IMG/VR virus record: IMGVR_UViG_3300036770_007495
Coordinates: 124,001 to 188,000 of that record
Strand: one strand, 5' to 3'
Length of the DNA: 64,000 nucleotides
Shown in pieces: positions 3,342-53,323 of this stretch (within the stretch, counting starts at the first letter, position 1; the number at the start of each line of letters is the position of its first letter). The notes beneath the pieces are model-generated. The model saw only the letters and a program-made list of their open reading frames with translations, had not been told where the DNA came from and searched no databases. Both the position numbers and the translations under genes were made by a program.

Positions 3342-4796
3342 ATGTTTGTAAAATTTGACATTGTAGATGATAAACCTTGCATCATTGCAGAGGATCATGT
3401 GTTGGAAGCAATCAGACATGAATTCAGCATTGAAAATGCAGCCAAGTCATTTACAACTGGGTACAAGAAAAAATTTATTCCCAGCAGGTTGTATGCAATT
3501 GCTGCAACAGGCAAGTTTGAAATTGGACTTACGCATGACATTCTGCGCACCATTGCTGCAAAACAATTGGCAAGCAATGTGGAGTTGACGGACAAGTTCA
3601 AAAGAAAGCTGCAACCCACCATTGATACATCAGTCTATGATGATTTGGCTCATGAATTGAGATACTATCAAAAAGAAGGTGTTGAAAAGGCTCTGCACAA
3701 TGGCAGAGGCATTTGTCAGCTTGCAACTGGCGCAGGCAAGACGCTCATCATTGCAAGCTTGGCTGCAAGTGCATATGCAAAATTTGAGAATTTTAGATGT
3801 CTCATTCTGGTACCAGATCCTGGACTTGCTCTGCAGACATTCAATGACTTCAAAAACTATCAAGTGCCATTCAAGACATGTTTGTGGACTGGTACAAATG
3901 AACTAGACTTGTCTGCAAATGTCATCATTGCCAATCAGCGCATTGTGCTCACAAGAGCAGAAGAAAATGAATGGATTGAATATGTTGATGTGTTGATTGT
4001 TGATGAAGTTCACACCATCAAAAAAGACAACAAGATCAACAAAATCATCAGCAAAATAAAAACCAATCATCGATTTGGTTTCACAGGCACTTTGCCTACT
4101 CATGCTGTTGATCGATGGAATGTGTTGGGTGCATTTGGCGACGTTGTCATCATCAAGTCAAGTGCAGAATTGCGCAGTGAAGGATTCTTGACCAATGTTG
4201 AAGCTAAAATTTTGAGCATTGCATACAAAAGCAAAGTTCAAAAGCCCATTGCCACACACAACGACAAAGGCAAAAAAATCTCAACAGCCAAGTACAAAGC
4301 AGAATTGGATTTCATTTATCACAATGAATATCGCAACAATATTCTGCAGCAACTGTGTTGCAACTTTAACAACAACATCTTGGTGCTCATCAATCATTTG
4401 GATCATGGGGAGACGCTGGTAAAGACATTGCAAGCTTGCACCACCAAGCAAGTGTTTTATGTGCACGGTGATGTTGAATTGCAAGACAGAGAAACCATCA
4501 AGCAAATGATGGAAAAACACAATGACGTCATTGTCATTGCCATGAGCAAAATTTTCTCAACAGGCATCAGCATCAACAACATTCACATGATTGTATTTGC
4601 TGCAGGTGGCAAGAGTTTTGTACGTGTGGTGCAGAGCATTGGACGTGGATTGCGATTGCATGAGAGCAAAGATCGTCTCATCATCATTGATGTGTTGGAT
4701 CAATTGCCATATGCTAGTGAACATGCTCAGCAAAGACAAACCATTTACAATTCTGAAAAAATCAAATATTCCATTGTTCCTTTTGTAGAAAAATAA
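3342..4796 (+). CDS. uvsW: UvsW SF2 DNA helicase
   Basis: LRYYQ Q-motif, ATGAGKT Walker A, DEVH, TGT, QSIGRGLR. Confidence 0.93.
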   Translation: MFVKFDIVDDKPCIIAEDHVLEAIRHEFSIENAAKSFTTGYKKKFIPSRLYAIAATGKFEIGLTHDILRTIAAKQLASNVELTDKFKRKLQPTIDTSVYDDLAHELRYYQKEGVEKALHNGRGICQLATGAGKTLIIASLAASAYAKFENFRCLILVPDPGLALQTFNDFKNYQVPFKTCLWTGTNELDLSANVIIANQRIVLTRAEENEWIEYVDVLIVDEVHTIKKDNKINKIISKIKTNHRFGFTGTLPTHAVDRWNVLGAFGDVVIIKSSAELRSEGFLTNVEAKILSIAYKSKVQKPIATHNDKGKKISTAKYKAELDFIYHNEYRNNILQQLCCNFNNNILVLINHLDHGETLVKTLQACTTKQVFYVHGDVELQDRETIKQMMEKHNDVIVIAMSKIFSTGISINNIHMIVFAAGGKSFVRVVQSIGRGLRLHESKDRLIIIDVLDQLPYASEHAQQRQTIYNSEKIKYSIVPFVEK

Positions 4797-4813
4797 CAAC
4801 CCCACACTATACT
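4786..4813 (+). promoter_or_regulatory. Sigma70-like promoter of gp55
   Basis: TAGAAA-N16-TATACT, 10 nt before ATG 4824. Confidence 0.55.
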
Positions 4814-4823
4814 AACAAACATT

Positions 4824-5306
4824 ATGTCTGTCAACGGAAAAAAACCAACAACAAAATTTAGCAAAGAGCAATTTTATGTAGATCCAGATGTGCTCAAACA
4901 ACAAATTACTGAGTTTTACCAAACAGAAGTTTGTACTACAGCACTTGGTGAAAGCATCAACAAAATTGCTCAGGGGCTAAGTTTCTCACCCAGCTTCATC
5001 AATTACACTTATCGTGATGAAATGATTGGTGATGCCATTGTAAAAATGTATAGTGCACTCAAGCACAAAAAGTACAATGTAAACACAGAAACAAATCCCT
5101 TCTCATACTTTACCACCATTGCATTCCATGCTTTCATCAATCGCATCAAGAAAGAAAAAAAGCATCATGAAGCTGTTGAGCAGTATCGTGCAAATGAATA
5201 CGAGAAGCTTCTGACTGCTGGAGAAATACATGACGAAAAATATCACATCTACACCAAACCCAACTGCGATGATTCAGACGACCAGCAAGATAGCGATCTT
5301 CAGTGA
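4824..5306 (+). CDS. 55: Late-transcription sigma factor gp55
   Basis: FINYTYRDEMIGDA and NPFSYFTTIAFHAFINRIKKEKK motifs; directly upstream of gp47/gp46. Confidence 0.93.
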   Translation: MSVNGKKPTTKFSKEQFYVDPDVLKQQITEFYQTEVCTTALGESINKIAQGLSFSPSFINYTYRDEMIGDAIVKMYSALKHKKYNVNTETNPFSYFTTIAFHAFINRIKKEKKHHEAVEQYRANEYEKLLTAGEIHDEKYHIYTKPNCDDSDDQQDSDLQ

Positions 5307-6315: not shown

Positions 6316-8105
6316 AGCACATCAACTTCAAAAAACTCTCCATTGTAAATTTCTTGTCAGTTGGCAAGGAGCCTGTCACAATTCATTTTGAGCAGGGCAT
6401 CAACATCATCACAGGCATCAACAAAGACATGGCTGACAGACGCAATGGTGTTGGCAAGTCCACCATTGCTGATGCATTATACTTTGCAATCTTTGGTACA
6501 ACCATTCGTGAACTCAAAAAAGACTTCATCAGCAACAGCATCACCAATGCTACTTGTGCTGTTGAATTGGAGTTTGATGTTGTTAGCTATGATGCAACCA
6601 AATGCTACAGAGTTGTGAGAACACTCAGCCCAAGCAAATGCTATTTGTTTGAAGATGATGTGGATGTAACTCGCGACTCAATTGCAAATACATCACAATA
6701 CATTTGTGACATTGTTGAAGCTTCTCCAAGCATTTTTCAAAATTGCGTCATCATGACACTCAATGGAACAATTCCATTCATGGCGCAAAGCAAAGTTGAC
6801 AAGCGCAAGTTCATTGAAAGCATTTTCAATTTGCAGGTGTTTAGCAAAATGCTCTCACATGTGAGAGATGATTACAATGACAACAAAAAATTGTATGATT
6901 TGGAGTTGTTTAAACTCAATGAAACGCAATCAAATCTCACCAAGTTTGAAAATCAGAAACAATCAATTCTTACTGACAGAGCATCCAAGCTTAGCAATCT
7001 GCAAGCATCCATTGATTCAAAGCAGAATGAAAAGCAACAATTGGAACAGCAACTGCAGGCAATTGTACCCATTGATGTTGATAAAATCAATGCAACCATT
7101 GAAGCACTCAACAAGGGATGTGACAAGTGTCAAGAAATCATTGATGAAATGATTCAAAAAACTGCTGTTGCAGAAATTCAAATCAAAAATTTAGCAGCCA
7201 AAAAAAATGCTATTGGCACAGATGAGGATGTGTGTCCCAAGTGTTTGAAACCACTTGAGTGCAATGATCATGAACATCTAGAAAAAGAAAAGCAATCTCT
7301 GCAAGAACAGATTGAAAGCTTGCAGCAACAGCTCAATGTTGACAAAAACAAATTGTCTGATGCAAAAAGCAAGAAGGAAGAAATCAAAAAGCTCATCACC
7401 AAAAACAATCAAAAGCTTACTCAGCATGAGCAAAATGAACGCAGCAAAAATGACATCAACAGAAAAATTGACGTCATTGATGAGCATTTGAAGACTGTTG
7501 ATGAATATGCAAATACACTCAAATGCACAACAACAGAAGTTGATGATGTAATTGTTGATAGCAAAGATAAGCTGCAAAAAATTGAAAAACAGGTTGCAGG
7601 TCAGCTTGAAAATGTAAACCTTCTCAACACAATGAAAGTCATTGTTTCAGAAGAAGGTGTAAAAGCATACATCATCAAGAAGATCTTGGCAATTCTCAAC
7701 AACAAGTTGCAACACTATTTGAATCGAATTGGCTTCAACTGCACATGCAAATTCAATGAATTGTTTGAAGAAGAGATTTACAATGACAAAGGCAAAGCAT
7801 GCAGCTATTTCAATTTCTCTGGTGCAGAGCGCAAGAGCATTGACTTGGCGTGCTTGTTTGCTTTCATTGACATTCGCAGAATGCAGGGCAATGTTGCATA
7901 CAATGTAGTATTTTATGATGAGCTTTTAGATACAAGTCTTGACGACAAAGGTGTTGAGCTCGTGCATGACATCATTGCTGATAGAGCCAAGAAGTTTAAT
8001 GAATGTGCGTACATCATCACACACCGCAAAGAAAGCGCATTCTTTGCAACAAGCAAAGTAATTCATCTGGAAAAGCATAATGGCATCACAAAGCGTGTTG
8101 AATGA
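6312..8105 (+). CDS. 46: gp46 Rad50/SbcC-like ATPase
   Basis: NFLSVG, NGVGKST Walker A, coiled coil with CPKC hook, FSGAE signature, YDELLD, ITH; ATGA overlap with gp47. Confidence 0.95.
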   Translation: MKHINFKKLSIVNFLSVGKEPVTIHFEQGINIITGINKDMADRRNGVGKSTIADALYFAIFGTTIRELKKDFISNSITNATCAVELEFDVVSYDATKCYRVVRTLSPSKCYLFEDDVDVTRDSIANTSQYICDIVEASPSIFQNCVIMTLNGTIPFMAQSKVDKRKFIESIFNLQVFSKMLSHVRDDYNDNKKLYDLELFKLNETQSNLTKFENQKQSILTDRASKLSNLQASIDSKQNEKQQLEQQLQAIVPIDVDKINATIEALNKGCDKCQEIIDEMIQKTAVAEIQIKNLAAKKNAIGTDEDVCPKCLKPLECNDHEHLEKEKQSLQEQIESLQQQLNVDKNKLSDAKSKKEEIKKLITKNNQKLTQHEQNERSKNDINRKIDVIDEHLKTVDEYANTLKCTTTEVDDVIVDSKDKLQKIEKQVAGQLENVNLLNTMKVIVSEEGVKAYIIKKILAILNNKLQHYLNRIGFNCTCKFNELFEEEIYNDKGKACSYFNFSGAERKSIDLACLFAFIDIRRMQGNVAYNVVFYDELLDTSLDDKGVELVHDIIADRAKKFNECAYIITHRKESAFFATSKVIHLEKHNGITKRVE

Positions 8106-8125
8106 TGCATAGACACGAATACATA
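8098..8125 (+). promoter_or_regulatory. Sigma70-like promoter
   Basis: TTGAAT-N16-TACATA, 7 nt before ATG 8133. Confidence 0.5.
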
Positions 8126-8132
8126 CAACATA

Positions 8133-9353
8133 ATGAATCATTCACCCTTTAGGCAACCTTTCAGAGCACCATTTGCGCCACCTGCCAGCATTGCGCCATT
8201 GGCTTCTGTGCCTGTTGCTGCACCAACAGTCAATACCCCTGAAGAAAATTTGCCTCGTGCATTGCAGTATGCTGCTGATACATCTGGGTGCGGTTTTTGG
8301 AGAATGATCTGGCCAGAGCATATTTTGAATGCCAATCAAAAAGCAATGATCACTACTACAACAGTGATGAATGCAAGTGAGAGCTTTTATGCACCTCTCA
8401 AAGCAATTCGCATTCAAAGACAAGCTACAGCACCTCAGCTTGAGTTTGTCAAATATTTGAAAGCTCTTCAGGGCAAATACGGTTTTCGCATCATTTACGA
8501 AATTGATGATGTTGTATTCCATGAAGATATTCCTGATTACAACAAATTTAAGTTTGCATTTGAATCACAGGAAATCAGAAACAACATCATGCAAATCATC
8601 AATTTGTGTGATGAGGTTACTGTGACCAACGAATTCATGCGCGATTATTTCCGCGAGAAAACAAACAAGCGCGAAATCTCTGTCATTCCAAACTTCCCAC
8701 CTGAATGGTGGATTGGTAGATACTATGATCCAAAGCGCAGCTACAATGCACTCTTGAAACACAAAAAGAAGCCACGCATTCTTTATGCTGGATCTGGTGC
8801 ACACTTTGATGTTGAAAACAAAGCTGGTCAGAAAGATGACTTTGAAGACATTGTAAAGCACATCATTGATACTCGGCACAAGTATACTTGGATTTTTATT
8901 GGTGCTGCTCCAATGCAGTTGATTCCATACATTCAGCGCAATGAGATTGAATTTCATCCATGGCAGCGCTTGTATGACTTTCCCAAGAAGATCTTTGAAT
9001 TGGAAGTGCAGATGCTCATTGCACCTTTGCAAGACAACAACTTCAACAGGTGCAAGAGTGACATCAAGTTCATTGAAGCATGCTGCATGGGATTGCCTGT
9101 TGCATGTCAGGACATGGTCACCTACAAAGATGCGCTCATCAAGTTTAAGACTGGTGAAGAAATGATGCACAAGATTGAAGAAACTCTCAAGCGTACCAAC
9201 AGGTATGTTGAAGATTCATATTCATTGCGCAAAATTGGTGAAAAGAGATTCTTGGAGCGTGATGAAAATCATGACTGCTACTTGGAATTGATTACAACAT
9301 CATATGGCAGCCCTGAGCGCAAAAATCTTTTGAGATACAATGATAGCATTTGA
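8133..9353 (+). CDS. GT-B fold glycosyltransferase
   Basis: SGCGFWRM..P, YEIDD, VIPN and IAPLQDNNFNRCKSDIKFIE..GLP donor-binding motif. Confidence 0.85.
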   Translation: MNHSPFRQPFRAPFAPPASIAPLASVPVAAPTVNTPEENLPRALQYAADTSGCGFWRMIWPEHILNANQKAMITTTTVMNASESFYAPLKAIRIQRQATAPQLEFVKYLKALQGKYGFRIIYEIDDVVFHEDIPDYNKFKFAFESQEIRNNIMQIINLCDEVTVTNEFMRDYFREKTNKREISVIPNFPPEWWIGRYYDPKRSYNALLKHKKKPRILYAGSGAHFDVENKAGQKDDFEDIVKHIIDTRHKYTWIFIGAAPMQLIPYIQRNEIEFHPWQRLYDFPKKIFELEVQMLIAPLQDNNFNRCKSDIKFIEACCMGLPVACQDMVTYKDALIKFKTGEEMMHKIEETLKRTNRYVEDSYSLRKIGEKRFLERDENHDCYLELITTSYGSPERKNLLRYNDSI

Positions 9354-9377
9354 TTTCCATTGATATGCACTTATAGT
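9350..9377 (+). promoter_or_regulatory. Sigma70-like promoter of gp43; -35 box contains the upstream TGA stop
   Basis: TTGATT-N16-TATAGT, 8 nt before ATG 9386. Confidence 0.6.
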
Positions 9378-9385
9378 GTATTCAT

Positions 9386-11935
9386 ATGATCGGCTATCGC
9401 AATGCAGTTTATCTGCCTCAAGAAGAATGCGTGAGAGTGTTCACATGGGATGAACATGGCAACAGAACTAAGTTTGATGCACATTACAGTCCGTATGTAA
9501 TGATTGAAGATCCTAACGGCAAAGAAGTTAGCATTTTCAATACCAAGTTGCGCACACGCAAGTTCAAAACTCAATACGATCGCAACAAGTTCATCAAAGA
9601 ATGTGGTACTCGTCGATTGTTTGAAAATCTCAATCCGGTGCAGCAATTCTTGGTTGATGCATATTGGAAGCATAATGCAGAAGCAGACTTTGGTAAATTT
9701 GCTGTGCGTGTCATCACCATTGACATTGAGGTGTATTCACCTTCAGAGTTTCCAACCGCAGAGCATGCTCGTCATCCCATCAACATCATTACGTTTCATG
9801 ACTCTCTTACCAACAGATTCTATTCATGGGGCACTAAAGAATATCATCATAATCGTGATGATTTAACTTATGTGTATTGCAAGACAGAGCGACAGCTGCT
9901 GCTTGACTTTATGGAGTTTTTTGGTACGCTTGAAGTGGATCTTCTCACAGGCTGGAACAGCGCAGGATTCGATATTCCGTACATCATCAATCGCATTGGT
10001 AATGTTCTTGGTGATGAATACTACCAGCAATTGTCTCCTGTGAAGCGTGTTTACAACAGAACACTCAATTCGGGTTTGTTTGGCAAGCAGCAAATTCGCT
10101 GGTACATTGATGGCATCTCTTGCGTAGATTACATTGACATCTACAAGCGCTTTAGTTTTGCCAACAGAGAAAGCTACAAGCTTGACTACATTGCAGAACT
10201 TGAATTGGGCGAGAAGAAGGTGGATTATGGTAATACAAATCTTGCAAGCTTAGCCAATGATGATTGGCAATTGTTTGTAGATTACAACTTGCAAGACGTT
10301 GCGTTGCTTGTGAAGATGGATCAGAAGCTGCAATACATTGAGTTGTTGAGAATGCTTGCATACATGGGTCTTACTACCATGGAAAATGCCATGAGCACCC
10401 TGTCAACCATCTCCGGAACTGCAGCCATCCGAGCCAGACAAAAAGGTCAGTTTTTGCCAACGTTTTTGCGTGGTGAAGATGATGGCAAGAATCCTGGTGC
10501 ATTTGTTGCAGAACCATTGGAAGGATTCCAGACTAGTGTTGTATCATTTGATGCAAACTCTCTGTATCCCAACATCATGATTAGTCTCAACATGTCACCT
10601 GAAACCAAGGTGGGTAAAATCATTGAGAGTGGCGATGAAGGTGTAGTGATTCAACACATCAATGGATCCACTTACAACTTATCACTTGCTAAATTTGCCA
10701 AGTTTGTCAAAGATGAGCAGATTGCCATTTCCAAAGCAAAGGTGTTGTTCAGTCAAAAGAACAAAGGCATCTTGCCTGAAATTGTGGATGAATACTACAA
10801 AGAGCGTGTTGCTGTTCGCAAAGAGATGATGAATCTTAAAAAGAGTGGCAACAAAAGCAAAGATGTACAAGACAAGATCACACAGCTCAATGCCAAGCAA
10901 TTGTGCATCAAGATTTTCATCAATAGCGTATATGGATACATGGGCAACAAAAATGCTCCATTGGGTGATGATGACATTGCTTCATCCATTACTCTGACTG
11001 GTCAGTTTGTAAACAAGTCGTCCAGATCATTGGCACGTGAGTATGTTGCAAGCATTGTAGGCAACAATGACTTTGAAGACATTGCTGTTGCTGGTGATAC
11101 TGACTCTGTCTACTTGTCCATTGCACCTTTGCTGAGACATCACAATGTGCCACTTGCAACTAATGGCAAGGTGACACCCAAGGTGTATGACATCATTGAT
11201 GGTCTCAACAATTACATCAATGAAAAGATCAACGAGAGAATGATCAATGAACTCAATTCAAAAGATCCTCGCATTTTCTTCAAACGAGAATCCATCATTG
11301 ATAAAGCATTGTTCTTGCAGAAAAAGCGGTATGTAGCTCACGTCATTGATGATGAAGGCATTGAGTGTGCCAAGTGGAAGTATGTGGGCGTTGAAGTGGT
11401 ACGAACTGCCATGCCCAAGGCTATCAAGCCCTATGTCAAGAAAATCATTGAGACAATGATTACTTCGCAGAATCGTGCTGATACCAACAAGGTATTGAAT
11501 GAAGCATATGAAGTACTCAAGACTCTCAAGCCAGAAGAAATTGCATATGTCATGGGTGTCAAAGATTATGACAAGTATGCATCTCAATGCAAAGAGTTTA
11601 CAACTGTCAAAGGTATGCCTGTGCATGTTAAATCTGCATATTACTACAACACTCTGCTCAACAAGTTGGAACTGTCGAGCAAATATGAAAAGCTGCAATC
11701 CGGAGACAAATTGAGATGGATGTATCTCAAGACACCCAACAAGTATGGGATGAAGACCATTGCATTCAAGTACTACTATCCAGAAGAATTTCACGCATTG
11801 TTTCAGATTGACTATGAAACAATGTTTGAGAAAATTGTATTCAGTGTTGTGGAGAGATTCTTTGCATGTGTCAAATGGCCTGCGCACAAGCCAAATGAGC
11901 AAATGAGCGCAGATTTATTTGATTTATTTGGTTGA
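9386..11935 (+). CDS. 43: Family B DNA polymerase gp43
   Basis: Exonuclease motifs DIE, GWNS.GFD.PY, YN.QD; polymerase motifs SFDANSLYP, K..INS.YG, GDTDS, KKRY. Confidence 0.97.
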   Translation: MIGYRNAVYLPQEECVRVFTWDEHGNRTKFDAHYSPYVMIEDPNGKEVSIFNTKLRTRKFKTQYDRNKFIKECGTRRLFENLNPVQQFLVDAYWKHNAEADFGKFAVRVITIDIEVYSPSEFPTAEHARHPINIITFHDSLTNRFYSWGTKEYHHNRDDLTYVYCKTERQLLLDFMEFFGTLEVDLLTGWNSAGFDIPYIINRIGNVLGDEYYQQLSPVKRVYNRTLNSGLFGKQQIRWYIDGISCVDYIDIYKRFSFANRESYKLDYIAELELGEKKVDYGNTNLASLANDDWQLFVDYNLQDVALLVKMDQKLQYIELLRMLAYMGLTTMENAMSTLSTISGTAAIRARQKGQFLPTFLRGEDDGKNPGAFVAEPLEGFQTSVVSFDANSLYPNIMISLNMSPETKVGKIIESGDEGVVIQHINGSTYNLSLAKFAKFVKDEQIAISKAKVLFSQKNKGILPEIVDEYYKERVAVRKEMMNLKKSGNKSKDVQDKITQLNAKQLCIKIFINSVYGYMGNKNAPLGDDDIASSITLTGQFVNKSSRSLAREYVASIVGNNDFEDIAVAGDTDSVYLSIAPLLRHHNVPLATNGKVTPKVYDIIDGLNNYINEKINERMINELNSKDPRIFFKRESIIDKALFLQKKRYVAHVIDDEGIECAKWKYVGVEVVRTAMPKAIKPYVKKIIETMITSQNRADTNKVLNEAYEVLKTLKPEEIAYVMGVKDYDKYASQCKEFTTVKGMPVHVKSAYYYNTLLNKLELSSKYEKLQSGDKLRWMYLKTPNKYGMKTIAFKYYYPEEFHALFQIDYETMFEKIVFSVVERFFACVKWPAHKPNEQMSADLFDLFG

Positions 11936-11959
11936 AAAACCAACAACAGAGGGTAAATT
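11932..11959 (+). promoter_or_regulatory. Sigma70-like promoter; -35 box contains the gp43 TGA stop
   Basis: TTGAAA-N16-TAAATT, 5 nt before ATG 11965. Confidence 0.55.
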
Positions 11960-11964
11960 ACTGC

Positions 11965-12315
11965 ATGAGTCAAAATCTTATCGCAATCAAGAGTCAAGGT
12001 GAAACAGTCATTGGTGAGCTCATCGAGCGCACCGAAACCAGTGTAAAGGTCAAGAATCCAGCAAGCTTGTATATTCAGCCAACGCAGAATGGTCAGCTTA
12101 CTGTGCAGTTGTTCCCAGTATTTTTTGGTGAGTTGCTTGATGCTGTAAAGCGCAGCGAAGGCACCGTCTGGACATACAATGTTGCAGGTGCAGGTGTTGG
12201 TGAAGACATTGCTTTTGATGAAAAGCTTGTTGCTCAATACACCAAGATTTTCAATCCTAGCCCCATCATCACCCCAGAAGGATCTGGCAAGGTTGTGAAG
12301 CTTTTCGATGATTGA
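11965..12315 (+). CDS. Small beta-rich hypothetical protein
   Basis: ATG 11965 follows the promoter; GETVIGEL...VKNPA pattern is typical of small SH3/Sm-like T4-type proteins. Confidence 0.7.
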   Translation: MSQNLIAIKSQGETVIGELIERTETSVKVKNPASLYIQPTQNGQLTVQLFPVFFGELLDAVKRSEGTVWTYNVAGAGVGEDIAFDEKLVAQYTKIFNPSPIITPEGSGKVVKLFDD

Positions 12316-12337: not shown

Positions 12338-12365
12338 AGAGCCGCAGAAATGCGGCTCTTTTTTT
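12338..12365 (+). terminator. Intrinsic terminator
   Basis: AGAGCCGCA-GAAA-TGCGGCTCT followed by a T run. Confidence 0.9.
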
Positions 12366-12376
12366 GTGGTTTGATC

Positions 12377-12404
12377 TTGATTTTCACTGGTGTCGCCATA
12401 CATA
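12377..12404 (+). promoter_or_regulatory. Sigma70-like promoter of uvsX
   Basis: TTGATT-N16-TACATA, 5 nt before ATG 12410, just after the terminator. Confidence 0.6.
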
Positions 12405-12409
12405 TTAAC

Positions 12410-13522
12410 ATGGACAAAGACATCATTTCAGCACTTGATAGCATCAACGAAATCAACCCCTACGCAACTTATCTCAACAACAATACACTCAGCACAGTCA
12501 AAGAATGGATTGATACTGGTTCTTATGTCTTGAATTCAATCATTTCTGGTTCACGCAATGGAGGTATTCCCAAGGGAAGAGTAACAATGATTGCAGGTGA
12601 ATCCATGACTGGTAAGTCTCTTTTTGTGCAAAAAATTCTTGCAAATGCACAGAAGATGGGTTTATTTCCTGTGATCTTTGACACTGAATCTGCCATTGAT
12701 CCTGAAGGTGCAAGTAGATTGGGATTGGATATTAGCAAAGTAAAGTATGTCCCATGTGTTAGCATTGAACAAACTAGAAATGCAGTATATAAATTTTTAG
12801 AAAGCATCAAAGAAAAAGGACTTGAAGGCAAGTTCATCGTAGCCATTGATTCTCTTGGCAACTTACAATCAGAATTGGAGTTGAAGCGCATGGATAAAGA
12901 AAGCACCAGCGCAGACATGGGCACCAAAGCTCGTGCCATGAAGTCACTTTTGCAAACATGCACCAACCTCGGAGCCATTACTCAAACAACTTTCGTAATA
13001 ACTAATCACGTATATGATGATCCAGCAGCAATGTATCCTAGCATTGAGAAGAATATGCCTGGCGGTAAATCAGTGGTATATCTCCCATCTGTCACTATTC
13101 AATTGGCTCGCAAGCCTCTGAAAGATGATGGAGGCAAAACTGTATCCAACAGCGATCTTGCAGTTGGTCAGAAGAATTATGGTGGCATCATCATCAGAGC
13201 ACTCACTCGCAAAAATCGATTCATCAAGCAGTACTTGGAGGGTGAAATGTACCTTTCATTCTCAACTGGGTTGGATCGCTATTACGGACTGCTTGATCTT
13301 GCTGTAGGCATGGGCGTTGTTGTGCAGAATGGTGCAACATATGCACTTGCTGATGGCACCAAACTTGGTTATGCTAAGAATTGGCGCAATGATGTAAAGT
13401 TGTGGGAAGAAACAATTCTTCCACAGCTTGAAGAAAAAATGAAAATTGAATGGGCATACGGCAACAAAAACAGCGAAGAAATTCCAGAAGAAGGAGGCAT
13501 TGAAGATGAAACCCAAGATTGA
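12410..13522 (+). CDS. uvsX: UvsX RecA-like recombinase
   Basis: IDTGSY.LN, GESMTGKS, FDTE, IDSLGNL, ADMG, TNHVY, PGG; the true start is ATG 12410. Confidence 0.95.
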   Translation: MDKDIISALDSINEINPYATYLNNNTLSTVKEWIDTGSYVLNSIISGSRNGGIPKGRVTMIAGESMTGKSLFVQKILANAQKMGLFPVIFDTESAIDPEGASRLGLDISKVKYVPCVSIEQTRNAVYKFLESIKEKGLEGKFIVAIDSLGNLQSELELKRMDKESTSADMGTKARAMKSLLQTCTNLGAITQTTFVITNHVYDDPAAMYPSIEKNMPGGKSVVYLPSVTIQLARKPLKDDGGKTVSNSDLAVGQKNYGGIIIRALTRKNRFIKQYLEGEMYLSFSTGLDRYYGLLDLAVGMGVVVQNGATYALADGTKLGYAKNWRNDVKLWEETILPQLEEKMKIEWAYGNKNSEEIPEEGGIEDETQD

Positions 13523-13775
13523 AATTCTATATTTTAGTGCAACATGGTGCGGTCCATGCAAGATGTTCAAACCCATTTTTGATCAATTCATCAGTGAGCA
13601 TCCTGAAGTTGAATGCAAATTCATTGATGTTGAACAGAGTGAAGGGTATGAACATTTCAGAGTAATGGCTGTACCCACCATTATTTTTCTTAAGAATGGC
13701 ATTGAGTGTGAAAGACTCTCTGGTTCAAAAAGTAAAAAAGTGCTTGAACAGACATTAGAAGACATTACATTCTAA
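13506..13775 (+). CDS. Thioredoxin
   Basis: FSATWCGPCK active site and cis-Pro loop AVPT. Confidence 0.92.
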   Translation: MKPKIEILYFSATWCGPCKMFKPIFDQFISEHPEVECKFIDVEQSEGYEHFRVMAVPTIIFLKNGIECERLSGSKSKKVLEQTLEDITF

Positions 13776-13776
13776 C

Positions 13777-14511
13777 ATGAAGAAAATTGTTGTACCTCTT
13801 TCTGGTGGCATGGACTCTGCAGTGCTGCTTTACAAGGCAGTTGAAGAAGCAGATGAAGTGCATTGCATCACATTTGATTATAGTCAGAGGCACAACAGAG
13901 AGTTGCAGTGTGCAGGATGGTTGTATGCAGATGCAAAATACAAAAGCAAGAAGCCAGTATTCTTGAAAAATGTAGATGCATCTTTTATTCGCCATCTTGC
14001 ACCAACTTCTTCTCTCACCAATGATTATATTGAAACACCAGACATCAGAAAGATTGCTGGAGAAGCACAGCCCAAGAGCTATGTACCATTTCGCAATCTG
14101 ATGTTTTTGAGCATTGCATTGTCTCATGCTGAGGCAGTTGGTGCAACAGAGGTGTGGCATGGTGCAACATCAGTTGATTCTTTGGCAGGGTATTGGGATG
14201 CTTCTCCTGAGTTTCTCCCACAGTTAAATGCTGTTGCAGCTCTCAATAGAGAGCACAAGATTCAAGTTGTTGCTCCATTGATTGCTTGTGATAAAGCAGA
14301 CATTGTGAAGATGGGTGTACAGTTGCAAGTACCATTTGCCAAGACATACACTTGCTATTCAGGTGAAGAGCTTGCAGATGCAACAACTCCAAGCAGCAGT
14401 CTCAGAATTCAAGGATTCCTCAAAGCAGGATACAAAGATCCCATCAAATACAAACAGCAAGAACAGATTGACAAGCTGTACATTCAGCACAACTGCCAAG
14501 ACATTGCTTAA
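13777..14511 (+). CDS. queC: QueC-family PP-loop ATPase, atypical (Zn-binding cysteines absent)
   Basis: LSGGMDS PP-loop, FDYSQRH..E, YVPFRNL.FLSIA, APL...KA.IV, TYTCY; YPDC is replaced by YWDA and CGxCxxC by ADATTPSS. Confidence 0.85.
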   Translation: MKKIVVPLSGGMDSAVLLYKAVEEADEVHCITFDYSQRHNRELQCAGWLYADAKYKSKKPVFLKNVDASFIRHLAPTSSLTNDYIETPDIRKIAGEAQPKSYVPFRNLMFLSIALSHAEAVGATEVWHGATSVDSLAGYWDASPEFLPQLNAVAALNREHKIQVVAPLIACDKADIVKMGVQLQVPFAKTYTCYSGEELADATTPSSSLRIQGFLKAGYKDPIKYKQQEQIDKLYIQHNCQDIA

Positions 14512-15549: not shown

Positions 15550-15577
15550 TTGAAAAATGAATGGCTTAATGTATATT
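15550..15577 (+). promoter_or_regulatory. Sigma70-like promoter of the GATase gene
   Basis: TTGAAA-N16-TATATT, 7 nt before ATG 15585. Confidence 0.6.
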
Positions 15578-15584
15578 GTTGAAT

Positions 15585-16286
15585 ATGTGTGCCATTTTTG
15601 GATCATTTGACCGCAGCATGTACGATGTTTTGTTTGAATCAAACAATGCAAGAGGCAATTTTGCTTACAGTCATTGTTTTCTCAACTCAAAAAGTGCTGC
15701 ACCTTTTCACATCAAAAAGTTCAATAAAATTCCAAAAATCAATGATATTACAGATGTGAGTTCAAATGTGTATCATTTTGGTCATTTTCAAGCACCCACC
15801 AGTTCAGTAAGAACATGGAAAGAAGAAACAAGTCACCCATTTGAGCATGGTGATTGGATTGTTGCTCACAATGGCGTTCTCACCAACTTTAAAGAGCTTG
15901 CTGATGAATATGCGCCCATGCTCAACATCAAAGTTGATAGTGCAATCATTCCAATGATGCTTGCAAATCATACATTTGAAATTGATGCCAAGCAAAAAGA
16001 TGCAGCAATGATTGAAAATGCTGTAAAAACTGTTTTGGAAAAACTCAAAGGCACATTTGCATTGTGGATCATCAATCGCAAGCACAAACGAGCTTTTGTT
16101 GCGCGTCAAGGCAGCACTCTTTTTGCAAATGCTAGCACCGGGAGCTTTTGTTCTGTTGAATGCAAAAGTGAAGGGTGGAGTGAACTATCAGAAGGTTACA
16201 TCTACGAAGTGCTCTTCAAAGCAAAGTGCCTTGCTCCATTTGCTAAGTTTAGCATTGACTCTCCATTCTTGTTTATTCAAGAGTAA
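15585..16286 (+). CDS. Stand-alone class II (Ntn) glutamine amidotransferase
   Basis: Starts M-C-A-I-F-G (catalytic Cys1); RG, GHFQAPT, HPF, VAHNG.LTN..EL, VDS, LKGTFA, AR motifs. Confidence 0.88.
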   Translation: MCAIFGSFDRSMYDVLFESNNARGNFAYSHCFLNSKSAAPFHIKKFNKIPKINDITDVSSNVYHFGHFQAPTSSVRTWKEETSHPFEHGDWIVAHNGVLTNFKELADEYAPMLNIKVDSAIIPMMLANHTFEIDAKQKDAAMIENAVKTVLEKLKGTFALWIINRKHKRAFVARQGSTLFANASTGSFCSVECKSEGWSELSEGYIYEVLFKAKCLAPFAKFSIDSPFLFIQE

Positions 16287-17628: not shown

Positions 17629-17651
17629 TTTTTGACATATCTTACTAACAC

Positions 17652-18974: not shown

Positions 18975-19002
18975 TTTTTATCAAAATCATGTAAATACCC
19001 AG

Positions 19003-39895: not shown

Positions 39896-39918
39896 TTGCT
39901 TTTATTTATCGCAATCGG

Positions 39919-41802
39919 TTAGTTTAACAATACTGTTTTAGAGCCTGATACAGAAGGTACAAAATTATTGATGCGTGTTTTTGTAATTTGAAGCACATCA
40001 TTTTGCAAATCCCATATTTGCTTCAAAACTCTGTTGAGTGTACCTGGACTTGATGCAATTTCATTGTCATGCACATAGAAGTTGTTGGCATTGTCAATGG
40101 TAATGCTGTTGAATTCATCATTTGTCAAAGCAACAATGCCTTGATTTACAAGATTGCCGATGTAGTCATAACTTGCTGCATATCTACCAGCAAGATAATT
40201 CTTTATGTACATTGTATTGGAGATGATTTTGTGCAATTCTTTGTTGAGAACAAATGCTTGAATCATTTCTGAATCATTAACTCTCAAGTTGTTGATTGCA
40301 TAAATGGTGAAGTCAGTTGATCCGAGCACACTTGTGTAGAGTGTTGGTTCTGTGTAATGTAAAATTCTGTTGAATGACTCACTCAAATATCCTGCAAAAA
40401 CAAAAATCTCATCAGCATCCAAGTTGCTAGGCAAGAGTGACATGCTGCTTACTGCAATGCCTTTTCTCACAATGGCTCTTCCATCATTCCAGCGCCATTT
40501 TGCGCGATTGTAACGAGAAAACTCATTGTTCCAAATGTGGTCATTTGTAAATCCGCTTTTGTAAAATAGCCATTTGCCAATGCTTACATCTGGTCTGTTG
40601 ACAAACTTTTTGAACACGTTTACATTGGTAAACATGTACATGATGTTGCTGTCATTGTATGAAAACTGCAATCCCTTGAAATATTCACCATCAATCAATT
40701 CATCCTGCAAAATGTATTCTTGCTCAATGTTGAGATCCACATCACAAATTTGCAGAGTATTTGTTTTGGTTGTTAAATTGCTCACAATTACATAGACCTT
40801 GTCAAAAACATCATTGTATTGAAAAGCACGTGCAACTGTTGATGTGCCAATGGTGAATGCTCTGGTTGTTATGTATGATAGATTAGAATCATACACTTTG
40901 ATGCATCTGTTGCCCTTGTCATGCACATACACACGATCAATGGAATCATTTGCATAAATTAAATCAGGGCCATTGAATTTTGTCTTGGCAAGAGCATTAC
41001 CCTCACCACCAATTGATGCAACTAAAAATCTCTTGTTGGTAAGAGGTACATCATTGTTGTAAAAGCCACCAACATCATATTTGTAGACATTGTTTTGCTT
41101 AACATCACAAACATACATGAAATTGTTAGTGATGCTGAAGCTGCTGAGTTGCAAAAATGTTAAATCGCTGTTGGTATCAACATTTGCATTGTCATGAGTC
41201 ACTTGCAATGATGTTAAATCAGGATTGCTACTCAACGCAATGATGGATGTAGGCGAAATGCCCAAGAAAGCATAGCCTACTTCATCTTGAATTTTTACAG
41301 CTTGCAGCTGAATTGCATTACCAATTGCACCAAGACCAACACCAGAAAAAGGTGTAAAAGTTGTAGCATCAGTTGGATCCTGTGCAATCCATGCTGGCAA
41401 TGCACTTAAACAACCTGCTGCACGATCAAAATTGTGTGGAATATCATTGCTTGCAATGAAGCATTTGGAATACAGATACAAAGAGTTGTTGTAGAGCTTA
41501 TACAGTCGGTCATTCAAAACTCTACCATTGAATGTCTCATTTGCTGCAATTTGTACATCAACATTGAAGTCATATGGCAGAGACAATTCATCTTTCAGAA
41601 TTCTATCTCTAAAAAACTTTGAAGTCACCACATCTGCTGCATACGTATTTTTATCTGCAAGTTCTGCTGCATTATCAGCAATGTCTCTAGAAGCATAGAT
41701 GTTTCCATCAACTACATGGTAGTATCCAACGTAGTCATTTCCGGTCAATGCAAAGTCTTTGCCGTTGGTGTATCCAACTTTGATGGAGGAGTAATCAATC
41801 AC
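39919..41802 (-). CDS. Virion structural protein with NHL-like beta-propeller
   Basis: YV.D..N.V.KY, KFNGP..I, VYV.D.GN..IKVYD repeats; GTG start 5 nt after TAAATA. Confidence 0.7.
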   Translation of the reverse strand: MIDYSSIKVGYTNGKDFALTGNDYVGYYHVVDGNIYASRDIADNAAELADKNTYAADVVTSKFFRDRILKDELSLPYDFNVDVQIAANETFNGRVLNDRLYKLYNNSLYLYSKCFIASNDIPHNFDRAAGCLSALPAWIAQDPTDATTFTPFSGVGLGAIGNAIQLQAVKIQDEVGYAFLGISPTSIIALSSNPDLTSLQVTHDNANVDTNSDLTFLQLSSFSITNNFMYVCDVKQNNVYKYDVGGFYNNDVPLTNKRFLVASIGGEGNALAKTKFNGPDLIYANDSIDRVYVHDKGNRCIKVYDSNLSYITTRAFTIGTSTVARAFQYNDVFDKVYVIVSNLTTKTNTLQICDVDLNIEQEYILQDELIDGEYFKGLQFSYNDSNIMYMFTNVNVFKKFVNRPDVSIGKWLFYKSGFTNDHIWNNEFSRYNRAKWRWNDGRAIVRKGIAVSSMSLLPSNLDADEIFVFAGYLSESFNRILHYTEPTLYTSVLGSTDFTIYAINNLRVNDSEMIQAFVLNKELHKIISNTMYIKNYLAGRYAASYDYIGNLVNQGIVALTNDEFNSITIDNANNFYVHDNEIASSPGTLNRVLKQIWDLQNDVLQITKTRINNFVPSVSGSKTVLLN

Positions 41803-51784: not shown

Positions 51785-52575
51785 GTTACTACTCCGGAGC
51801 ATATCAAGCACCAACATGCGGCGTGTTTTACACTGGCGCTAACAATGGAAACTTTGATTGTCAAGTCAATGTCAACAACTTGAACAACAATGCTTCTGAA
51901 CGTGAAACCATCTCCAATTCCATTCAAGAAGCCATCAATCGATTTGGATCCACTGTAGCATACTATGTGAATACATACAATGTATCTGCTGCAAACAACA
52001 TTTATGGTGAAGATCCAACCAGCACATTCTTTGGTCCAACCAATGTGGTGATGTACATCAAATTGTCTGAAAATTCAGTTACATTGCGCAGATTTGGCTT
52101 TGATAGTGGTGATGACATTACAGCATATGTGCACATCAGTTCATATTATGCAACATTTGCACCATTGAGTGTGTATCCTGCATTGCAGCAAGCCATTGAA
52201 CCCAAAGCAGGTGATGTATTCCAGATGATTCAGTATGGTGCAACCAGACCAGGTGATCGCAATGGCAAATTCTTCGAAATCACTGAAAGAGTTGATCAAG
52301 AAATGGATGATCCAAGCATGAATCCATTGGGTGGACACTACATGTGGAAATTGCGTGCTCGCCGTCTTGACTTTAGCTTTGAGCCTGGATTGTCTGGTGA
52401 AAGAGGTGCTGCACAGGTGTTTGACAATGCTCTCAATGGCATCATGCCTGGCGGTACACAACAACCTTCACCTGACAAGACATATCCCGGCAGCGCAGAT
52501 GCAGAAAGCCTCAACATTTTTGATCAAAGTGTAAACAACACAAGTGTTTATGGAGAATATGGTTACAACCCTTGA
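51781..52575 (+). CDS. 14: gp14-like neck protein
   Basis: E.I..FG..V.Y...IYGED....F...MY...FG...D...PK.GD....FFEIT. Confidence 0.8.
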   Translation: MSYYSGAYQAPTCGVFYTGANNGNFDCQVNVNNLNNNASERETISNSIQEAINRFGSTVAYYVNTYNVSAANNIYGEDPTSTFFGPTNVVMYIKLSENSVTLRRFGFDSGDDITAYVHISSYYATFAPLSVYPALQQAIEPKAGDVFQMIQYGATRPGDRNGKFFEITERVDQEMDDPSMNPLGGHYMWKLRARRLDFSFEPGLSGERGAAQVFDNALNGIMPGGTQQPSPDKTYPGSADAESLNIFDQSVNNTSVYGEYGYNP

Positions 52576-52599
52576 TTTTTCATTGCATGGTGTTATTAT
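52572..52599 (+). promoter_or_regulatory. Sigma70-like promoter; -35 box contains the gp14 TGA stop
   Basis: TTGATT-N13-TGT-TATTAT (extended -10), 7 nt before ATG 52607. Confidence 0.65.
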
Positions 52600-52606
52600 T
52601 TGATAG

Positions 52607-53323
52607 ATGATCACATTTGATGAAGCAAATCACAAGTATTACAATGAGTTTGGCACTGAATACATTAGTGTAACAACTTTTTTGAATACATTAAAGAAGC
52701 CTTTTGATACTGAAAAGCACGCTGCACGTGTTGCTGAAAAGAACAATACTACACCTGATGCAATCAAAGCAACATGGAAAGCATTGACTGTTGAAGCTCA
52801 AGAAAAGGGCAAGGCTTTTCACAAAGCCATGGAAGATTACATCAAATATGGAGAGATTGATGCTCAATATTCAGATCTCATCAAAAGTCTCAACAAGGCC
52901 AGTGAAGGCTTCAAGGCCAACAAGAAGACAGCAGAAGGTTTGCTGTGGAATGATGAATCACAAATTGCAGGAACAGCGGATTTGGTGTTGGAAAATGATG
53001 ATGATTTCTTCATCTTGGACTTCAAAACCAACAAAAAGTTCACTTTTATGAATGCTTTTGGTGAAAAATTACTTGCACCTCTCGACTTCTTAGATTATTG
53101 TGAGTTTACAATTTACTCTTTGCAATTGTCCTTGTATGCTTACATGAAGCAAAAGCTCACTGGAAAGCACTGCAAGGGGTTGAAAGTGCTTTACTTGACT
53201 GTAAATACATTCAACAACACAAGATATTGGAGAGAAATTCCCATCATCTATTGCAAAGACACCATTGAAAAACTAATACAACATCGCAAAGCATCTCTAT
53301 CTACACAGCATGCAAATACATGA
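52607..53323 (+). CDS. PD-(D/E)XK exonuclease
   Basis: H.Y...SVTT, G..FH..ME, AGTADL, DFKT, Y.LQLS.YA. Confidence 0.88.
   Translation: MITFDEANHKYYNEFGTEYISVTTFLNTLKKPFDTEKHAARVAEKNNTTPDAIKATWKALTVEAQEKGKAFHKAMEDYIKYGEIDAQYSDLIKSLNKASEGFKANKKTAEGLLWNDESQIAGTADLVLENDDDFFILDFKTNKKFTFMNAFGEKLLAPLDFLDYCEFTIYSLQLSLYAYMKQKLTGKHCKGLKVLYLTVNTFNNTRYWREIPIIYCKDTIEKLIQHRKASLSTQHANT

What the first reader, a model, noticed from the sequence alone, without database searches (positions are those of the whole stretch)
4786..52607. Early/middle genes also look leaderless: TTGA-nn-N15-17-TA-nn-(A/T)(A/T), 5-10 nt before ATG
Seen at 4786 (gp55; TAGAAA variant), 8098 (GT), 9350 (gp43), 11932, 12377 (uvsX), 15550 (GATase), 18971 (DHH), 24990 (primase), 27819 and 52572. 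The -10 box ends 5-10 nt before the ATG, leaving a leader of about 0-4 nt. Several -10 boxes (TAAATA, TAAATT, TACATA) are close to the late box and may be dual sigma70/gp55 promoters. Genes without a promoter mostly overlap the previous stop (ATGA), consistent with translational coupling. The canonical -35/-10 form argues against a Bacteroidetes-type host even though SD sites are missing (inference).
Basis: partly seen in the sequence, partly recalled or inferred. Interest (0 to 1): 0.7.

Follow-up and report, generated by a model that had tools for sequence, protein, structure and literature searches.

The report
Promoters fused to start codons
In this uncultured 225-kb T4-like phage, replication-gene promoters end 5-8 bases before the ATG and no ribosome-binding sites exist anywhere, so first genes are probably translated from leaderless messages: a known bacterial trick, here used genome-wide in a T4 relative.

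Summary
All ten sites exist as written, and four more were found in the window. Genome-wide, a TAnnnT box ends 5-6 nt before 16% of 292 first-ATG starts, against about 1.2% per position at other ATGs. TTGA peaks 30 nt upstream. The base before the ATG is a pyrimidine in 85% of these genes.

There is no Shine-Dalgarno signal: anti-SD pairing is weaker at starts (-0.71 kcal/mol) than at random ATGs (-1.42). The same test gives -5.65 for T4.

The promoter-to-start spacing is conserved in IMG/VR relatives from a 236-contig clade: uvsX 49/58, gp43 39/40, helicase 38/41. Internal control genes show 9/33 and 3/37.

Three things fix the start codons:
- A terminator sits directly before the uvsX -35 box.
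- The amidotransferase begins Met-Cys.
- Only third-codon positions vary from the ATG onward.

No transcript 5' ends could be obtained, so "leaderless" stays a strong inference.

The window's boxes (TAyATT) differ from the early-region TATAAT and resemble the late box, which favours the dual-promoter idea. The host is unresolved.

The closest known parallels are the -10-next-to-ORF pattern of Deinococcus-Thermus and Thermus phage phiYS40. I rate this a new variant of a known kind.

The parts
4786..4826 (+). gp55 (late sigma) promoter-like site: -35 TAGAAA 4786-4791, 16-nt spacer, -10 TATACT 4808-4813, 10 nt, ATG 4824. Weakest site.
   Evidence: gp55 identity from PHROG 234, E=1e-25. One relative (L004) has TTGAGA-N16-TATAAT-N5-ATG.
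8098..8135 (+). Glycosyltransferase promoter: -35 TTGAAT 8098-8103, 16-nt spacer, -10 TACATA 8120-8125, 7 nt, ATG 8133.
   Evidence: The box is one mismatch from the late TAAATA. Relatives carry TATATA or TAAATA at this place.
9350..9388 (+). DNA polymerase gp43 promoter: -35 TTGATT 9350-9355, 16-nt spacer, -10 TATAGT 9372-9377, 8 nt, ATG 9386.
   Evidence: 39 of 40 distinct relatives have a -10 box 4-8 nt before the start. An in-frame stop lies 4 codons upstream.
11932..11967 (+). orf116 promoter: -35 TTGAAA 11932-11937, 16-nt spacer, -10 TAAATT 11954-11959, 5 nt, ATG 11965.
   Evidence: Conserved in 19 of 25 relatives.
12338..12366 (+). Intrinsic terminator (9-bp stem with 6 G-C pairs, then a T run) directly upstream of the uvsX -35 box. 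The ORF's first ATG (12350) lies in the hairpin loop.
   Evidence: Many relatives show a hairpin plus T run before the uvsX -35.
12377..12412 (+). uvsX promoter: -35 TTGATT 12377-12382, 16-nt spacer, -10 TACATA 12399-12404, 5 nt, ATG 12410 (the true start).
   Evidence: Relatives' UvsX alignments begin at residue 17-22 of the long ORF. 49 of 58 relatives have the -10 box at d=4-8, and 44 of these also have TTG at -35.
13744..13779 (+). QueC promoter inside the end of the upstream gene: -35 TTGAAC, 16-nt spacer, -10 TACATT 13766-13771, 5 nt, ATG 13777.
   Evidence: QueC Pfam E=7e-51. Kept only in close relatives.
15550..15587 (+). Class-II glutamine amidotransferase promoter: -35 TTGAAA 15550-15555, 16-nt spacer, -10 TATATT 15572-15577, 7 nt, ATG 15585 followed by Cys codon 2.
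   Evidence: The Met-Cys start is conserved, and 36 of 45 relatives have a -10 box at d=4-8.
17617..17654 (+). DnaB-like helicase promoter (weak here): -35 TTGTAT, 15-nt spacer, -10 TATCTT 17638-17643, 8 nt, ATG 17652.
   Evidence: 38 of 41 relatives have a -10 box at d=4-8, 26 of them at d=6. 33 of the 41 relatives use GTG as the start codon.
18971..19005 (+). DHH phosphoesterase, candidate dual promoter: -35 TTGATT 18971-18976, 15-nt spacer, late-type box TAAATA 18992-18997, 5 nt, ATG 19003.
   Evidence: TAAATA lies 4-8 nt before the start in 18 of 26 relatives.
24751..24789 (+). orf62, candidate dual promoter: TTGTAA, 17-nt spacer, TAAATA 24774-24779, 7 nt, ATG 24787.
24990..25026 (+). Primase promoter: -35 TTGATA 24990-24995, 17-nt spacer, -10 TACATT 25013-25018, 5 nt, ATG 25024.
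26962..26996 (+). orf147 promoter: TTGCCA, 15-nt spacer, TAAATT 26983-26988, 5 nt, ATG 26994.
27819..27855 (+). orf88 promoter: -35 TTGATC 27819-27824, 17-nt spacer containing GGAAAC, -10 TACATT 27842-27847, 5 nt, ATG 27853.
52572..52609 (+). PD-(D/E)XK exonuclease promoter: -35 TTGATT 52572-52577, 16-nt spacer, -10 TATTAT 52594-52599, 7 nt, ATG 52607. An in-frame stop lies 1 codon upstream.
1685..1721 (-). Minus-strand gene 1277-1687: TTGAAA, 16-nt spacer, late box TAAATA 1699-1694, 6 nt, ATG 1687. Candidate dual promoter.
39893..39930 (-). Minus-strand gene 38294-39895: TTGTTA, 16-nt spacer, late box TAAATA 39908-39903, 7 nt, ATG 39895. Candidate dual promoter.

Best explanation
These are real promoters placed so that RNA polymerase starts on, or within about 3 nt of, the A of the ATG. 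The first cistron of each early or middle transcription unit is therefore made from a leaderless (0-3 nt leader) mRNA.

Proposed translation mechanism (inferred):
- Ribosomes load on the 5'-terminal AUG without any Shine-Dalgarno pairing.
- Downstream cistrons, which have no promoter and no SD, are translated by coupling or re-initiation at overlapping or closely spaced stop-start junctions.
- SD-independent initiation on A-rich, G-poor, unstructured start regions also contributes.

The window's boxes (TTGAww-N15-17-TAyATT, mostly 5 nt before the ATG) form a subclass distinct from the early-region boxes (TTGACt-N16-TATAAT, mostly 6 nt). In sequence and geometry they resemble the late box (TAAATA, mostly 5 nt). 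They are therefore candidate middle or dual promoters.

Shown: the anatomy, the statistics, the conservation, the absence of SD and the start-codon identity.
Inferred: the transcription start position, which sigma reads which box, and the translation mode.
For: Position and statistics:
- The motif-first distance peak lies at 5-7 nt, and the start-anchored peaks agree.
- 46 genes carry a sigma70-type promoter at d=4-8, and 51 carry a late box at d=4-8.
- Of sigma70-type boxes within 80 nt of starts, 32 lie at d=5-8. Only 13 are scattered at 9-66 nt, where about 6 are expected by chance.
- The -1 base is a pyrimidine in 85% of these genes, with A at +1. This fits the known pyrimidine(-1)/purine(+1) start-site preference.

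No SD:
- Anti-SD pairing averages -0.71 at starts against -1.42 at control ATGs.
- G falls to 9-14% at -15 to -1.
- The same test gives -5.65 for T4, -4.26 for HTVC008M and -4.45 for C48C1.

Geometry contrast: T4 late boxes sit 14-28 nt upstream of the ATG, mostly with an evident SD between.

Conservation: the adjacency holds in relatives while spacer sequence diverges, and internal-gene controls are negative. Across 79 loci the distance peak lies at 5-8 nt.

Start codons fixed independently:
- Terminator, then -35, then -10, then ATG at uvsX.
- Met-Cys at the amidotransferase.
- In-frame stops 1-15 codons upstream, with no upstream ATG at 15 of 16 sites.
- Only third positions vary from the ATG onward.

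Structure: the first 35 nt from the AUG fold weakly, -1.7 against -4.5 kcal/mol. Internal start regions also fold weakly, -2.8 against -5.6.

Same geometry in validated leaderless systems: the -10 motif lies 6-7 bp before ORFs in D. radiodurans (PMC12340547), and the Pribnow box lies 6-8 nt before starts in GeneMarkS-2 group C genomes (PMC6028130).

Subclass split: position 5 of the -10 box is T in 17 of 25 promoters outside the early region, against 4 of 21 inside it (P=0.0012).
Against: - No transcript 5' ends are available. The metatranscriptome data exist only as assembled contigs of a 90-95% relative or as low-depth fragments.
- Some of those contigs cross the promoters (X19, 10802-13898; X28, 12359-12542). 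If they are RNA, leadered read-through transcripts of the same genes also exist.
- With d=5, the commonest spacing here, the A of the ATG is the 6th base after the hexamer. In E. coli the 7th is preferred (my own knowledge), so part of the class could start on the U unless this polymerase or sigma differs.
- Sites with d=8-10 (gp43, helicase, gp55) would carry 1-4 nt leaders.
- Two boxes (TACATA) lack the near-invariant final T of sigma70 -10 elements.
- The loose pattern alone is only 2x chance in the window.
- The host and its translation apparatus are unknown.
Confidence: 0.7

Rival explanations
1. The promoters are real, but the tight spacing is a by-product of genome compaction. Most protein would then come from long read-through polycistronic RNAs by SD-independent internal initiation, and the 5'-AUG transcripts would contribute little.
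For: - Intergenic gaps at these sites are only 27-48 nt, just enough for a promoter.
- RNA contigs span the promoters.
- Internal genes are clearly translated without SD or a promoter.
Against: - Compaction does not predict a sharp 5-7 nt peak or pyrimidine enrichment at -1.
- It does not predict conservation of the exact spacing across a diverged clade.
- The uvsX terminator should stop read-through just before the promoter.
- Equally compact T4 keeps 14-28 nt leaders.
Confidence: 0.15
2. The AT-rich boxes next to the ATG are not promoters. They would be a non-SD translation signal of the kind seen upstream of Bacteroidetes genes.
For: - Start regions are A-rich and G-poor everywhere.
- The host appears not to use SD.
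Against: - The boxes have a TTGA partner at fixed -35 spacing.
- They are absent before internal genes, 9/33 and 3/37 in relatives.
- They follow terminators.
- The second box type equals the T4 late promoter core, and gp55 is present.
Confidence: 0.05
3. The pattern arises from chance matches plus wrong start-codon calls.
For: - The loose pattern is only 2x chance in the window.
- A generic sigma70 scan gives 61 sites against 46 +/- 7.
- My gene calls use a simple first-ATG rule.
Against: - 11 of 19 pattern ATGs are gene starts, P about 2e-15.
- The motif-first peak is independent of gene calls.
- The arrangement is conserved in relatives.
- Starts are fixed by Met-Cys, the terminator and upstream stops.
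Confidence: 0.03

Closest known systems
The '-10 motif adjacent to ORF' leaderless pattern of Deinococcus-Thermus (D. deserti, D. radiodurans), and GeneMarkS-2 'group C' genomes (Actinobacteria, Deinococcus-Thermus)
   Same: - TAnnnT lies about 6-7 nt before the start codon in roughly a third of genes.
- The transcript starts at the AUG or GUG.
- The geometry is the same as here (PMC12340547; PMC4007540; PMC6028130).
   Different: - Those genomes keep a GGAG SD on their leadered and internal genes; this phage has none at all.
- The -35 box is strong here.
- This is a virus of about 41% GC from fresh and subsurface water, not a high-GC bacterium.
Thermus thermophilus phage phiYS40
   Same: It is a large myovirus whose middle and late transcripts are mostly leaderless (review PMC3594737).
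   Different: - It is not a T4-type phage.
- Its host phylum itself favours leaderless mRNAs.
- It is reported to shift host IF2 and IF3 levels. No IF3, S1 or S21 gene was found here.
- In the present phage the early class is leaderless too.
T4 early, middle and late promoter system, and the overlapping early+late 'middle' promoters proposed for RB49 and cyanophages S-PM2 and Syn9
   Same: - gp55 is present and the late box core is TAAATA.
- Early promoters are sigma70-like.
- The idea that middle expression comes from combined early and late boxes has a precedent (PMC2984593).
   Different: - T4 boxes lie 14-28 nt from the ATG, with SD sites between.
- No MotA box replaces the -35 here.
- AsiA and RegA were not detected, although those searches had silent controls.
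- In the 50-kb stretch of cyanophage P-SSM4 that I sampled, late boxes are mostly 28-35 nt upstream.
Pelagibacter phage HTVC008M and phage C48C1 (Kyanoviridae)
   Same: - HTVC008M has TAAATAG 4-5 nt before the ATG at about 10 of 62 sampled starts.
- C48C1 has TTGACx-N17-TATAAT 6-7 nt before the ATG of its polymerase and primase genes.
   Different: - Both still use SD widely: 47% of starts pair at -4.5 kcal/mol or better, against 9% here.
- They are only about 30% identical in gp43.
- I found no paper describing this feature in them.
SD-independent initiation in Bacteroidetes and cyanobacteria
   Same: SD is lacking, upstream regions are A-rich, and start regions are unstructured (PMC6847099 and PMC3121790 listed).
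   Different: - Those organisms use leadered mRNAs.
- Bacteroidetes promoters are TTTG / TAnnTTTG (my own knowledge). Only 1 of 10 window boxes fits that form.

Membership tests
Bacterial leaderless genes (-10 box next to the start codon) | A TAnnnT-type -10 element ends about 5-8 nt before the start codon | tested here: met
   In the window, d=5-8 at 13 of the 14 sigma70-type or dual + strand sites; gp55 is the exception at d=10.
Bacterial leaderless genes (-10 box next to the start codon) | No Shine-Dalgarno sequence between the promoter and the start codon | tested here: met
   with T4 as positive control.
Bacterial leaderless genes (-10 box next to the start codon) | The mapped transcript 5' end lies at or within a few nt of the start codon | not testable with these tools
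   Only assembled RNA contigs were available, with no 5'-end information.
Bacterial leaderless genes (-10 box next to the start codon) | The abutting codon is the true translation start | tested here: met
   Supported by four lines, though without protein data:
- Met-Cys at the amidotransferase.
- uvsX relatives plus the terminator.
- Upstream in-frame stops.
- Codon-type variation beginning at the ATG.
Housekeeping sigma70-type promoter | A TTGACA-like -35, a 17 +/- 1 nt spacer and a TATAAT-like -10 | tested here: met
   The spacer mode is 16. Two window boxes (TACATA) lack the final T.
Housekeeping sigma70-type promoter | Recognised by the host primary sigma holoenzyme | not testable with these tools
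   The host is unknown, and the phage also encodes an ECF-like sigma.
T4 MotA/AsiA middle promoter | A MotA box near -30 replaces the -35, and AsiA and MotA genes are present | tested here: inconclusive
   The -35 TTGA is retained at all sites. The AsiA search was empty but its control rang nowhere. MotA was not searched.
T4-type late promoter (gp55) | A TATAAATA-like box and a gp55 gene | tested here: met
   This applies to the DHH, orf62, 1687 and 39895 sites only. The TAAATA core is shown; gp55. gp33 and gp45 were not examined.
Bacteroidetes-type promoter | TTTG at -33 and TAnnTTTG at -7 | tested here: not met
   Only the primase box reads TACATTTG; the other nine do not fit. The consensus is from my own knowledge.
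Shine-Dalgarno-led initiation | Anti-SD complementarity 5-12 nt upstream of starts, above background | tested here: not met
   It lies below background and G is depleted.

The most novel reading that the evidence does not exclude
A whole uncultured clade of T4-like phages, found in many water and soil metagenomes, runs all three temporal classes (early, middle-like, late) as leaderless, SD-free messages. At least 236 IMG/VR contigs carry a UvsX relative (the best 80 are 75-96% identical), and no cultured relative exceeds about 33%.

This would imply one of two things:
- A host lineage whose ribosomes start mainly on 5'-AUG or unstructured RNA while its sigma reads TTGACA/TATAAT.
- A phage-imposed switch of translation toward leaderless mRNAs.

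The clade would additionally carry a clade-specific promoter element (GGAAC about 4 nt upstream of the -10 box) read by a phage factor such as its ECF-like sigma or an unknown regulator.
Probability: 0.35. Interest if true: 0.75.

Novelty: new variant of a known kind. Interest (0 to 1): 0.6.

Why it matters
- T4 is the textbook case of SD-led, leader-regulated phage translation. A relative that drops leaders and SD sites entirely shows how far that programme can be rewired.
- Gene callers and promoter predictors mis-start such genes. Here the first ATG of uvsX lies inside a terminator loop.
- The pattern is a sequence-only clue to the translation habits of an unknown host.
- The clade offers compact promoter-ATG cassettes with a defined geometry.
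- It makes a concrete question testable: whether gp55-type late promoters and sigma70-type promoters have converged on the same box position so that one ATG can serve two temporal classes.

Tried and rejected
- **Transcript 5' ends from public runs.** Two run searches and two read layings gave only Logan contigs of a 90-95% relative or low-depth fragments. No starts could be read.
- **Iterative PWM refinement.** It drifted into low-information matches and was dropped in favour of anchored counts.
- **Host identification.**
  - There is no near DNA match in phage records.
  - The best cultured relatives are about 30-33% identical.
  - One GTDB scan found only a 2-kb Melainabacteria-MAG contig, which may be a binning artefact.
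  - Relatives cannot be drawn for a virus record.
  - Atlas neighbours of QueC are mostly viral.
  - Atlas neighbours of the ECF-like sigma are only weakly Bacteroidota.
- **Phage-encoded translation helpers.** S21, IF3 and S1 were not found. AsiA and RegA were not found either, but with silent controls.
- **GGAAC as an ECF -35 box.** Rejected, because no GGAAC peak lies 33-36 nt before starts.
- **Literature.** I found no description of leaderless T4-like phages. The phiYS40 primary paper is not held.

Full report
**What the window is.** The window is bases 124001-188000 of a complete 224,703-bp virus record with direct terminal repeats and about 41% GC. It encodes T4-type gp55, a family-B DNA polymerase, UvsX, a DnaB-like helicase and a primase. 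Its nearest cultured relatives share only 30-33% identity in gp43 and UvsX, and no phage record matches at the DNA level. The DNA occurs in subsurface, lake, freshwater, estuary, seawater and soil metagenomes. IMG/VR holds 236 contigs encoding a UvsX relative, and the best 80 are 75-96% identical to it. It is therefore an uncultured but widespread T4-like clade.

**Checking the observation.** The signal lies in where the matches fall. Eleven of the 19 matched ATGs are called gene starts, out of 3,725 ATGs and 67 starts in the window (P about 2e-15). A tighter pattern gives 9 against 3.0, reached by none of 100 shuffles.

Genome-wide, and without using gene calls, the distance from TTGAnn-N16-18-TAnnnT to the next ATG peaks at 5, 6 and 7 nt, 49 observed against about 12 expected. 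Anchored on the first ATG of each called ORF, a rule that ignores promoters:
- TAnnnT ends 5 nt before 9.2% of 292 starts and 6 nt before 6.8%, against 1.2% at 12,691 other ATGs.
- TTGA peaks 30 nt upstream.
- The late core TAAATA ends 5-7 nt upstream at 17% of starts, against under 0.1% at other ATGs.

In all, 46 genes carry a sigma70-type promoter and 51 a late box at 4-8 nt. Sigma70-type boxes further from starts are near the chance level: 13 lie at 9-66 nt where about 6 are expected, against 32 at 5-8 nt. I found four more sites of the same kind in the window: QueC, helicase, orf62 and orf147.

**Are the ATGs the true starts?**
- At 15 of 16 window sites an in-frame stop lies 1-15 codons upstream, with no upstream in-frame ATG.
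- The exception is uvsX, and it is instructive. The first ATG (12350) lies in the loop of a strong terminator hairpin (12338-12359, then a T run). Relatives' UvsX alignments begin at residue 17-22 of that long ORF.
- The layout there is terminator, -35, -10, ATG, which leaves no room for a leader. Many relatives show the same hairpin and T run before the -35.
- The glutamine amidotransferase begins Met-Cys, as class-II (N-terminal nucleophile) amidotransferases are expected to (my own knowledge). That ATG-TGY is conserved in relatives, 5-8 nt after a -10 box.
- From the ATG onward, relatives differ mainly at third codon positions. Upstream, only the two boxes are kept.

**Conservation.** Among distinct relatives, a -10 box ends 4-8 nt before the orthologous start in:
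- uvsX, 49 of 58 (44 of these also with TTG at -35);
- gp43, 39 of 40;
- helicase, 38 of 41;
- amidotransferase, 36 of 45;
- orf116, 19 of 25.

DHH keeps a late TAAATA in 18 of 26. Two genes that are internal to operons in the window serve as controls and show 9 of 33 and 3 of 37. A motif-first count over 79 related loci (1.1 Mb) shows the same 5-8 nt peak. In 33 of 41 relatives the helicase starts with GTG, usually 6 nt after the -10 box.

**No Shine-Dalgarno.** Anti-SD pairing averages -0.71 kcal/mol at starts, weaker than at random ATGs (-1.42). Only 3% of starts reach -6. G falls to 9-14% at -15 to -1. The same script gives:
- -5.65 against -1.39 for T4;
- -4.26 for HTVC008M;
- -4.45 for C48C1.

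**Where transcription should start.**
- With 6 nt between hexamer and ATG, the A is the canonical +1. The early-region TATAAT class has its mode at 6.
- The window's class and the late class have their mode at 5. As I recall, this is the T4 late-promoter geometry.
- The base before the ATG is C or T in 85% of sigma70-type cases and G in 2%. This fits the pyrimidine(-1)/purine(+1) start preference.
- The first 35 nt from the AUG fold weakly, -1.7 against -4.5 kcal/mol.
- The geometry equals that of experimentally validated leaderless genes: 6-7 bp in D. radiodurans (PMC12340547) and 6-8 nt in group C genomes (PMC6028130).
- T4 late boxes, by contrast, lie 14-28 nt upstream of the ATG, mostly with an evident SD between.

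**Genes without promoters.** In the + strand gene block at window 2928-32072, 13 of 20 promoterless genes overlap the upstream stop; six of these are the ATGA type and the rest overlap by 14-26 nt. Four more lie 2-15 nt away. Genome-wide, 73 of 201 overlap and 42 lie within 10 nt. Their start regions are A-rich, G-poor and unstructured, -2.8 against -5.6 kcal/mol. This fits coupling plus SD-independent initiation.

**Promoter classes.** In the early region (genome 8-51 kb, outside the window) the boxes are TTGACt-N16-TATAAT. Elsewhere, including the window, position 5 of the -10 box is T in 17 of 25, giving TAyATT, against 4 of 21 in the early region (P=0.0012). TAyATT is close to the late TAAATA.

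- Eleven of 51 late boxes have TTG at the -35 position, against 7% by chance (P=8e-4).
- Orthologous uvsX, GT and DHH boxes switch between TATAAT, TATATA/TACATA and TAAATA at the same place in relatives.
- There is a precedent in RB49, S-PM2 and Syn9 (PMC2984593).

The dual-promoter idea is not proven. The phage also encodes an early ECF-like sigma (genome 34454-35038) that might read some class.

**What could not be shown.** Public RNA runs gave only assembled contigs of a 90-95% relative or thin fragments, so no 5' ends could be read. Some contigs cross the promoters, so read-through transcripts may coexist with the leaderless ones.

The host remains unknown. The box form does not fit the Bacteroidetes consensus in 9 of 10 sites, whereas the SD-free, A-rich start regions do resemble that phylum. 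The other leads are weak.

**Comparison and novelty.** Leaderless expression from a -10 box next to the ORF is established in Deinococcus-Thermus and Actinobacteria, and in Thermus phage phiYS40 (PMC3594737). Partial versions sit unremarked in public T4-like genomes:
- HTVC008M has a late box 4-5 nt before about 10 of 62 sampled starts.
- C48C1 has sigma70-type boxes 6-7 nt before its polymerase and primase ATGs.
- Both still use SD widely.
- In the 50-kb stretch of cyanophage P-SSM4 sampled, late boxes lie mostly 28-35 nt upstream.

What is new here is the extreme form. All recognisable promoter classes are fused to start codons, and SD is lost completely, across a large uncultured T4-like clade. 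I found no paper describing this. I rate it a new variant of a known kind, of moderate to high interest. My confidence is about 0.7 that most of these genes are expressed from transcripts with leaders of 0-3 nt.

Noticed in passing
Genome 19-48 kb (outside the window), e.g. starts at 23268, 31795, 32257, 33879, 45507. In the window: 27831-27836. Also relatives L011-L068.: A third conserved promoter box, GGAA(A/C)(C/T), lies about 4 nt upstream of the -10 hexamer and 21-22 nt before the ATG.
- In G000 it occurs 6 times at spacing 4, against 0.8 expected.
- It recurs in relatives before both TATAAT and TAAATA boxes, for example at gp43 and DHH.
- Its function is unknown. It is not placed like an ECF -35 element.
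   Followed up: partly
Genome 34454-35038 (L082:1414-1998), outside the window: An early-region gene encodes a 194-aa ECF-like sigma factor. It has a Sigma70_r2 hit, and its Atlas structure neighbours carry regions 2 and 4. It could direct one promoter class. The commonest phylum among its neighbours is Bacteroidota, which is weak evidence.
   Followed up: partly
Window 13777-14511 and 15585-16286: QueC lies close to a class-II glutamine amidotransferase, separated by one opposite-strand gene. This suggests a 7-deazaguanine DNA-modification pathway in the phage.
   Followed up: no
Window 15519-15584: This 66-nt divergent intergenic region holds two promoters back to back. One is a late TAAATA box 5 nt before the minus-strand ATG at 15518. 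The other is the sigma70-type promoter of the amidotransferase on the plus strand.
   Followed up: partly
Relatives L015-L066, helicase homologue of window 17652; also genome 223733 (minus strand): Relatives' helicase genes mostly start with GTG, usually 6 nt after the -10 box, and so does one G000 gene. These would be leaderless GUG starts. As I recall, such starts work in mycobacteria and Deinococcus but poorly in E. coli.
   Followed up: partly
Genome 27.6-71.7 kb, outside the window: ARAGORN called 24 tRNA genes in this region and one doubtful tmRNA (58613-59056).
   Followed up: no
Genome 15331-15391 and 24690-24756, outside the window: There are a few exceptions with leaders. For example, a TTGACT-N17-TATAAT promoter lies 23 nt before the ATG at 15389, with an A-rich, SD-free leader. 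A tandem arrangement lies before 24754.
   Followed up: partly
Loci L005, L043, L055 (amidotransferase start): Three relatives have a GGAG-like stretch and ATT in place of ATG before the conserved Cys codon, unlike the rest of the clade.
   Followed up: no
L085 (HTVC008M 1-50000) and L086 (C48C1 1-50000): Two published phages show partial versions of the same architecture. HTVC008M has TAAATAG 4-5 nt before about 10 of 62 starts. C48C1 has sigma70-type boxes 6-7 nt before its polymerase and primase ATGs.
   Followed up: partly
L081 (CALBDR010000328.1): The only GTDB genome hit for UvsX (61% identity) is a 2-kb contig in a 'Candidatus Melainabacteria' MAG. It could be a host hint or a binning artefact.
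   Followed up: no
Window 5230-6315 against 4824-5306: The first-ATG ORF after gp55 overlaps gp55 by 77 nt, and my caller dropped gp55 because of it. The true start of the downstream gene is probably further in.
   Followed up: no
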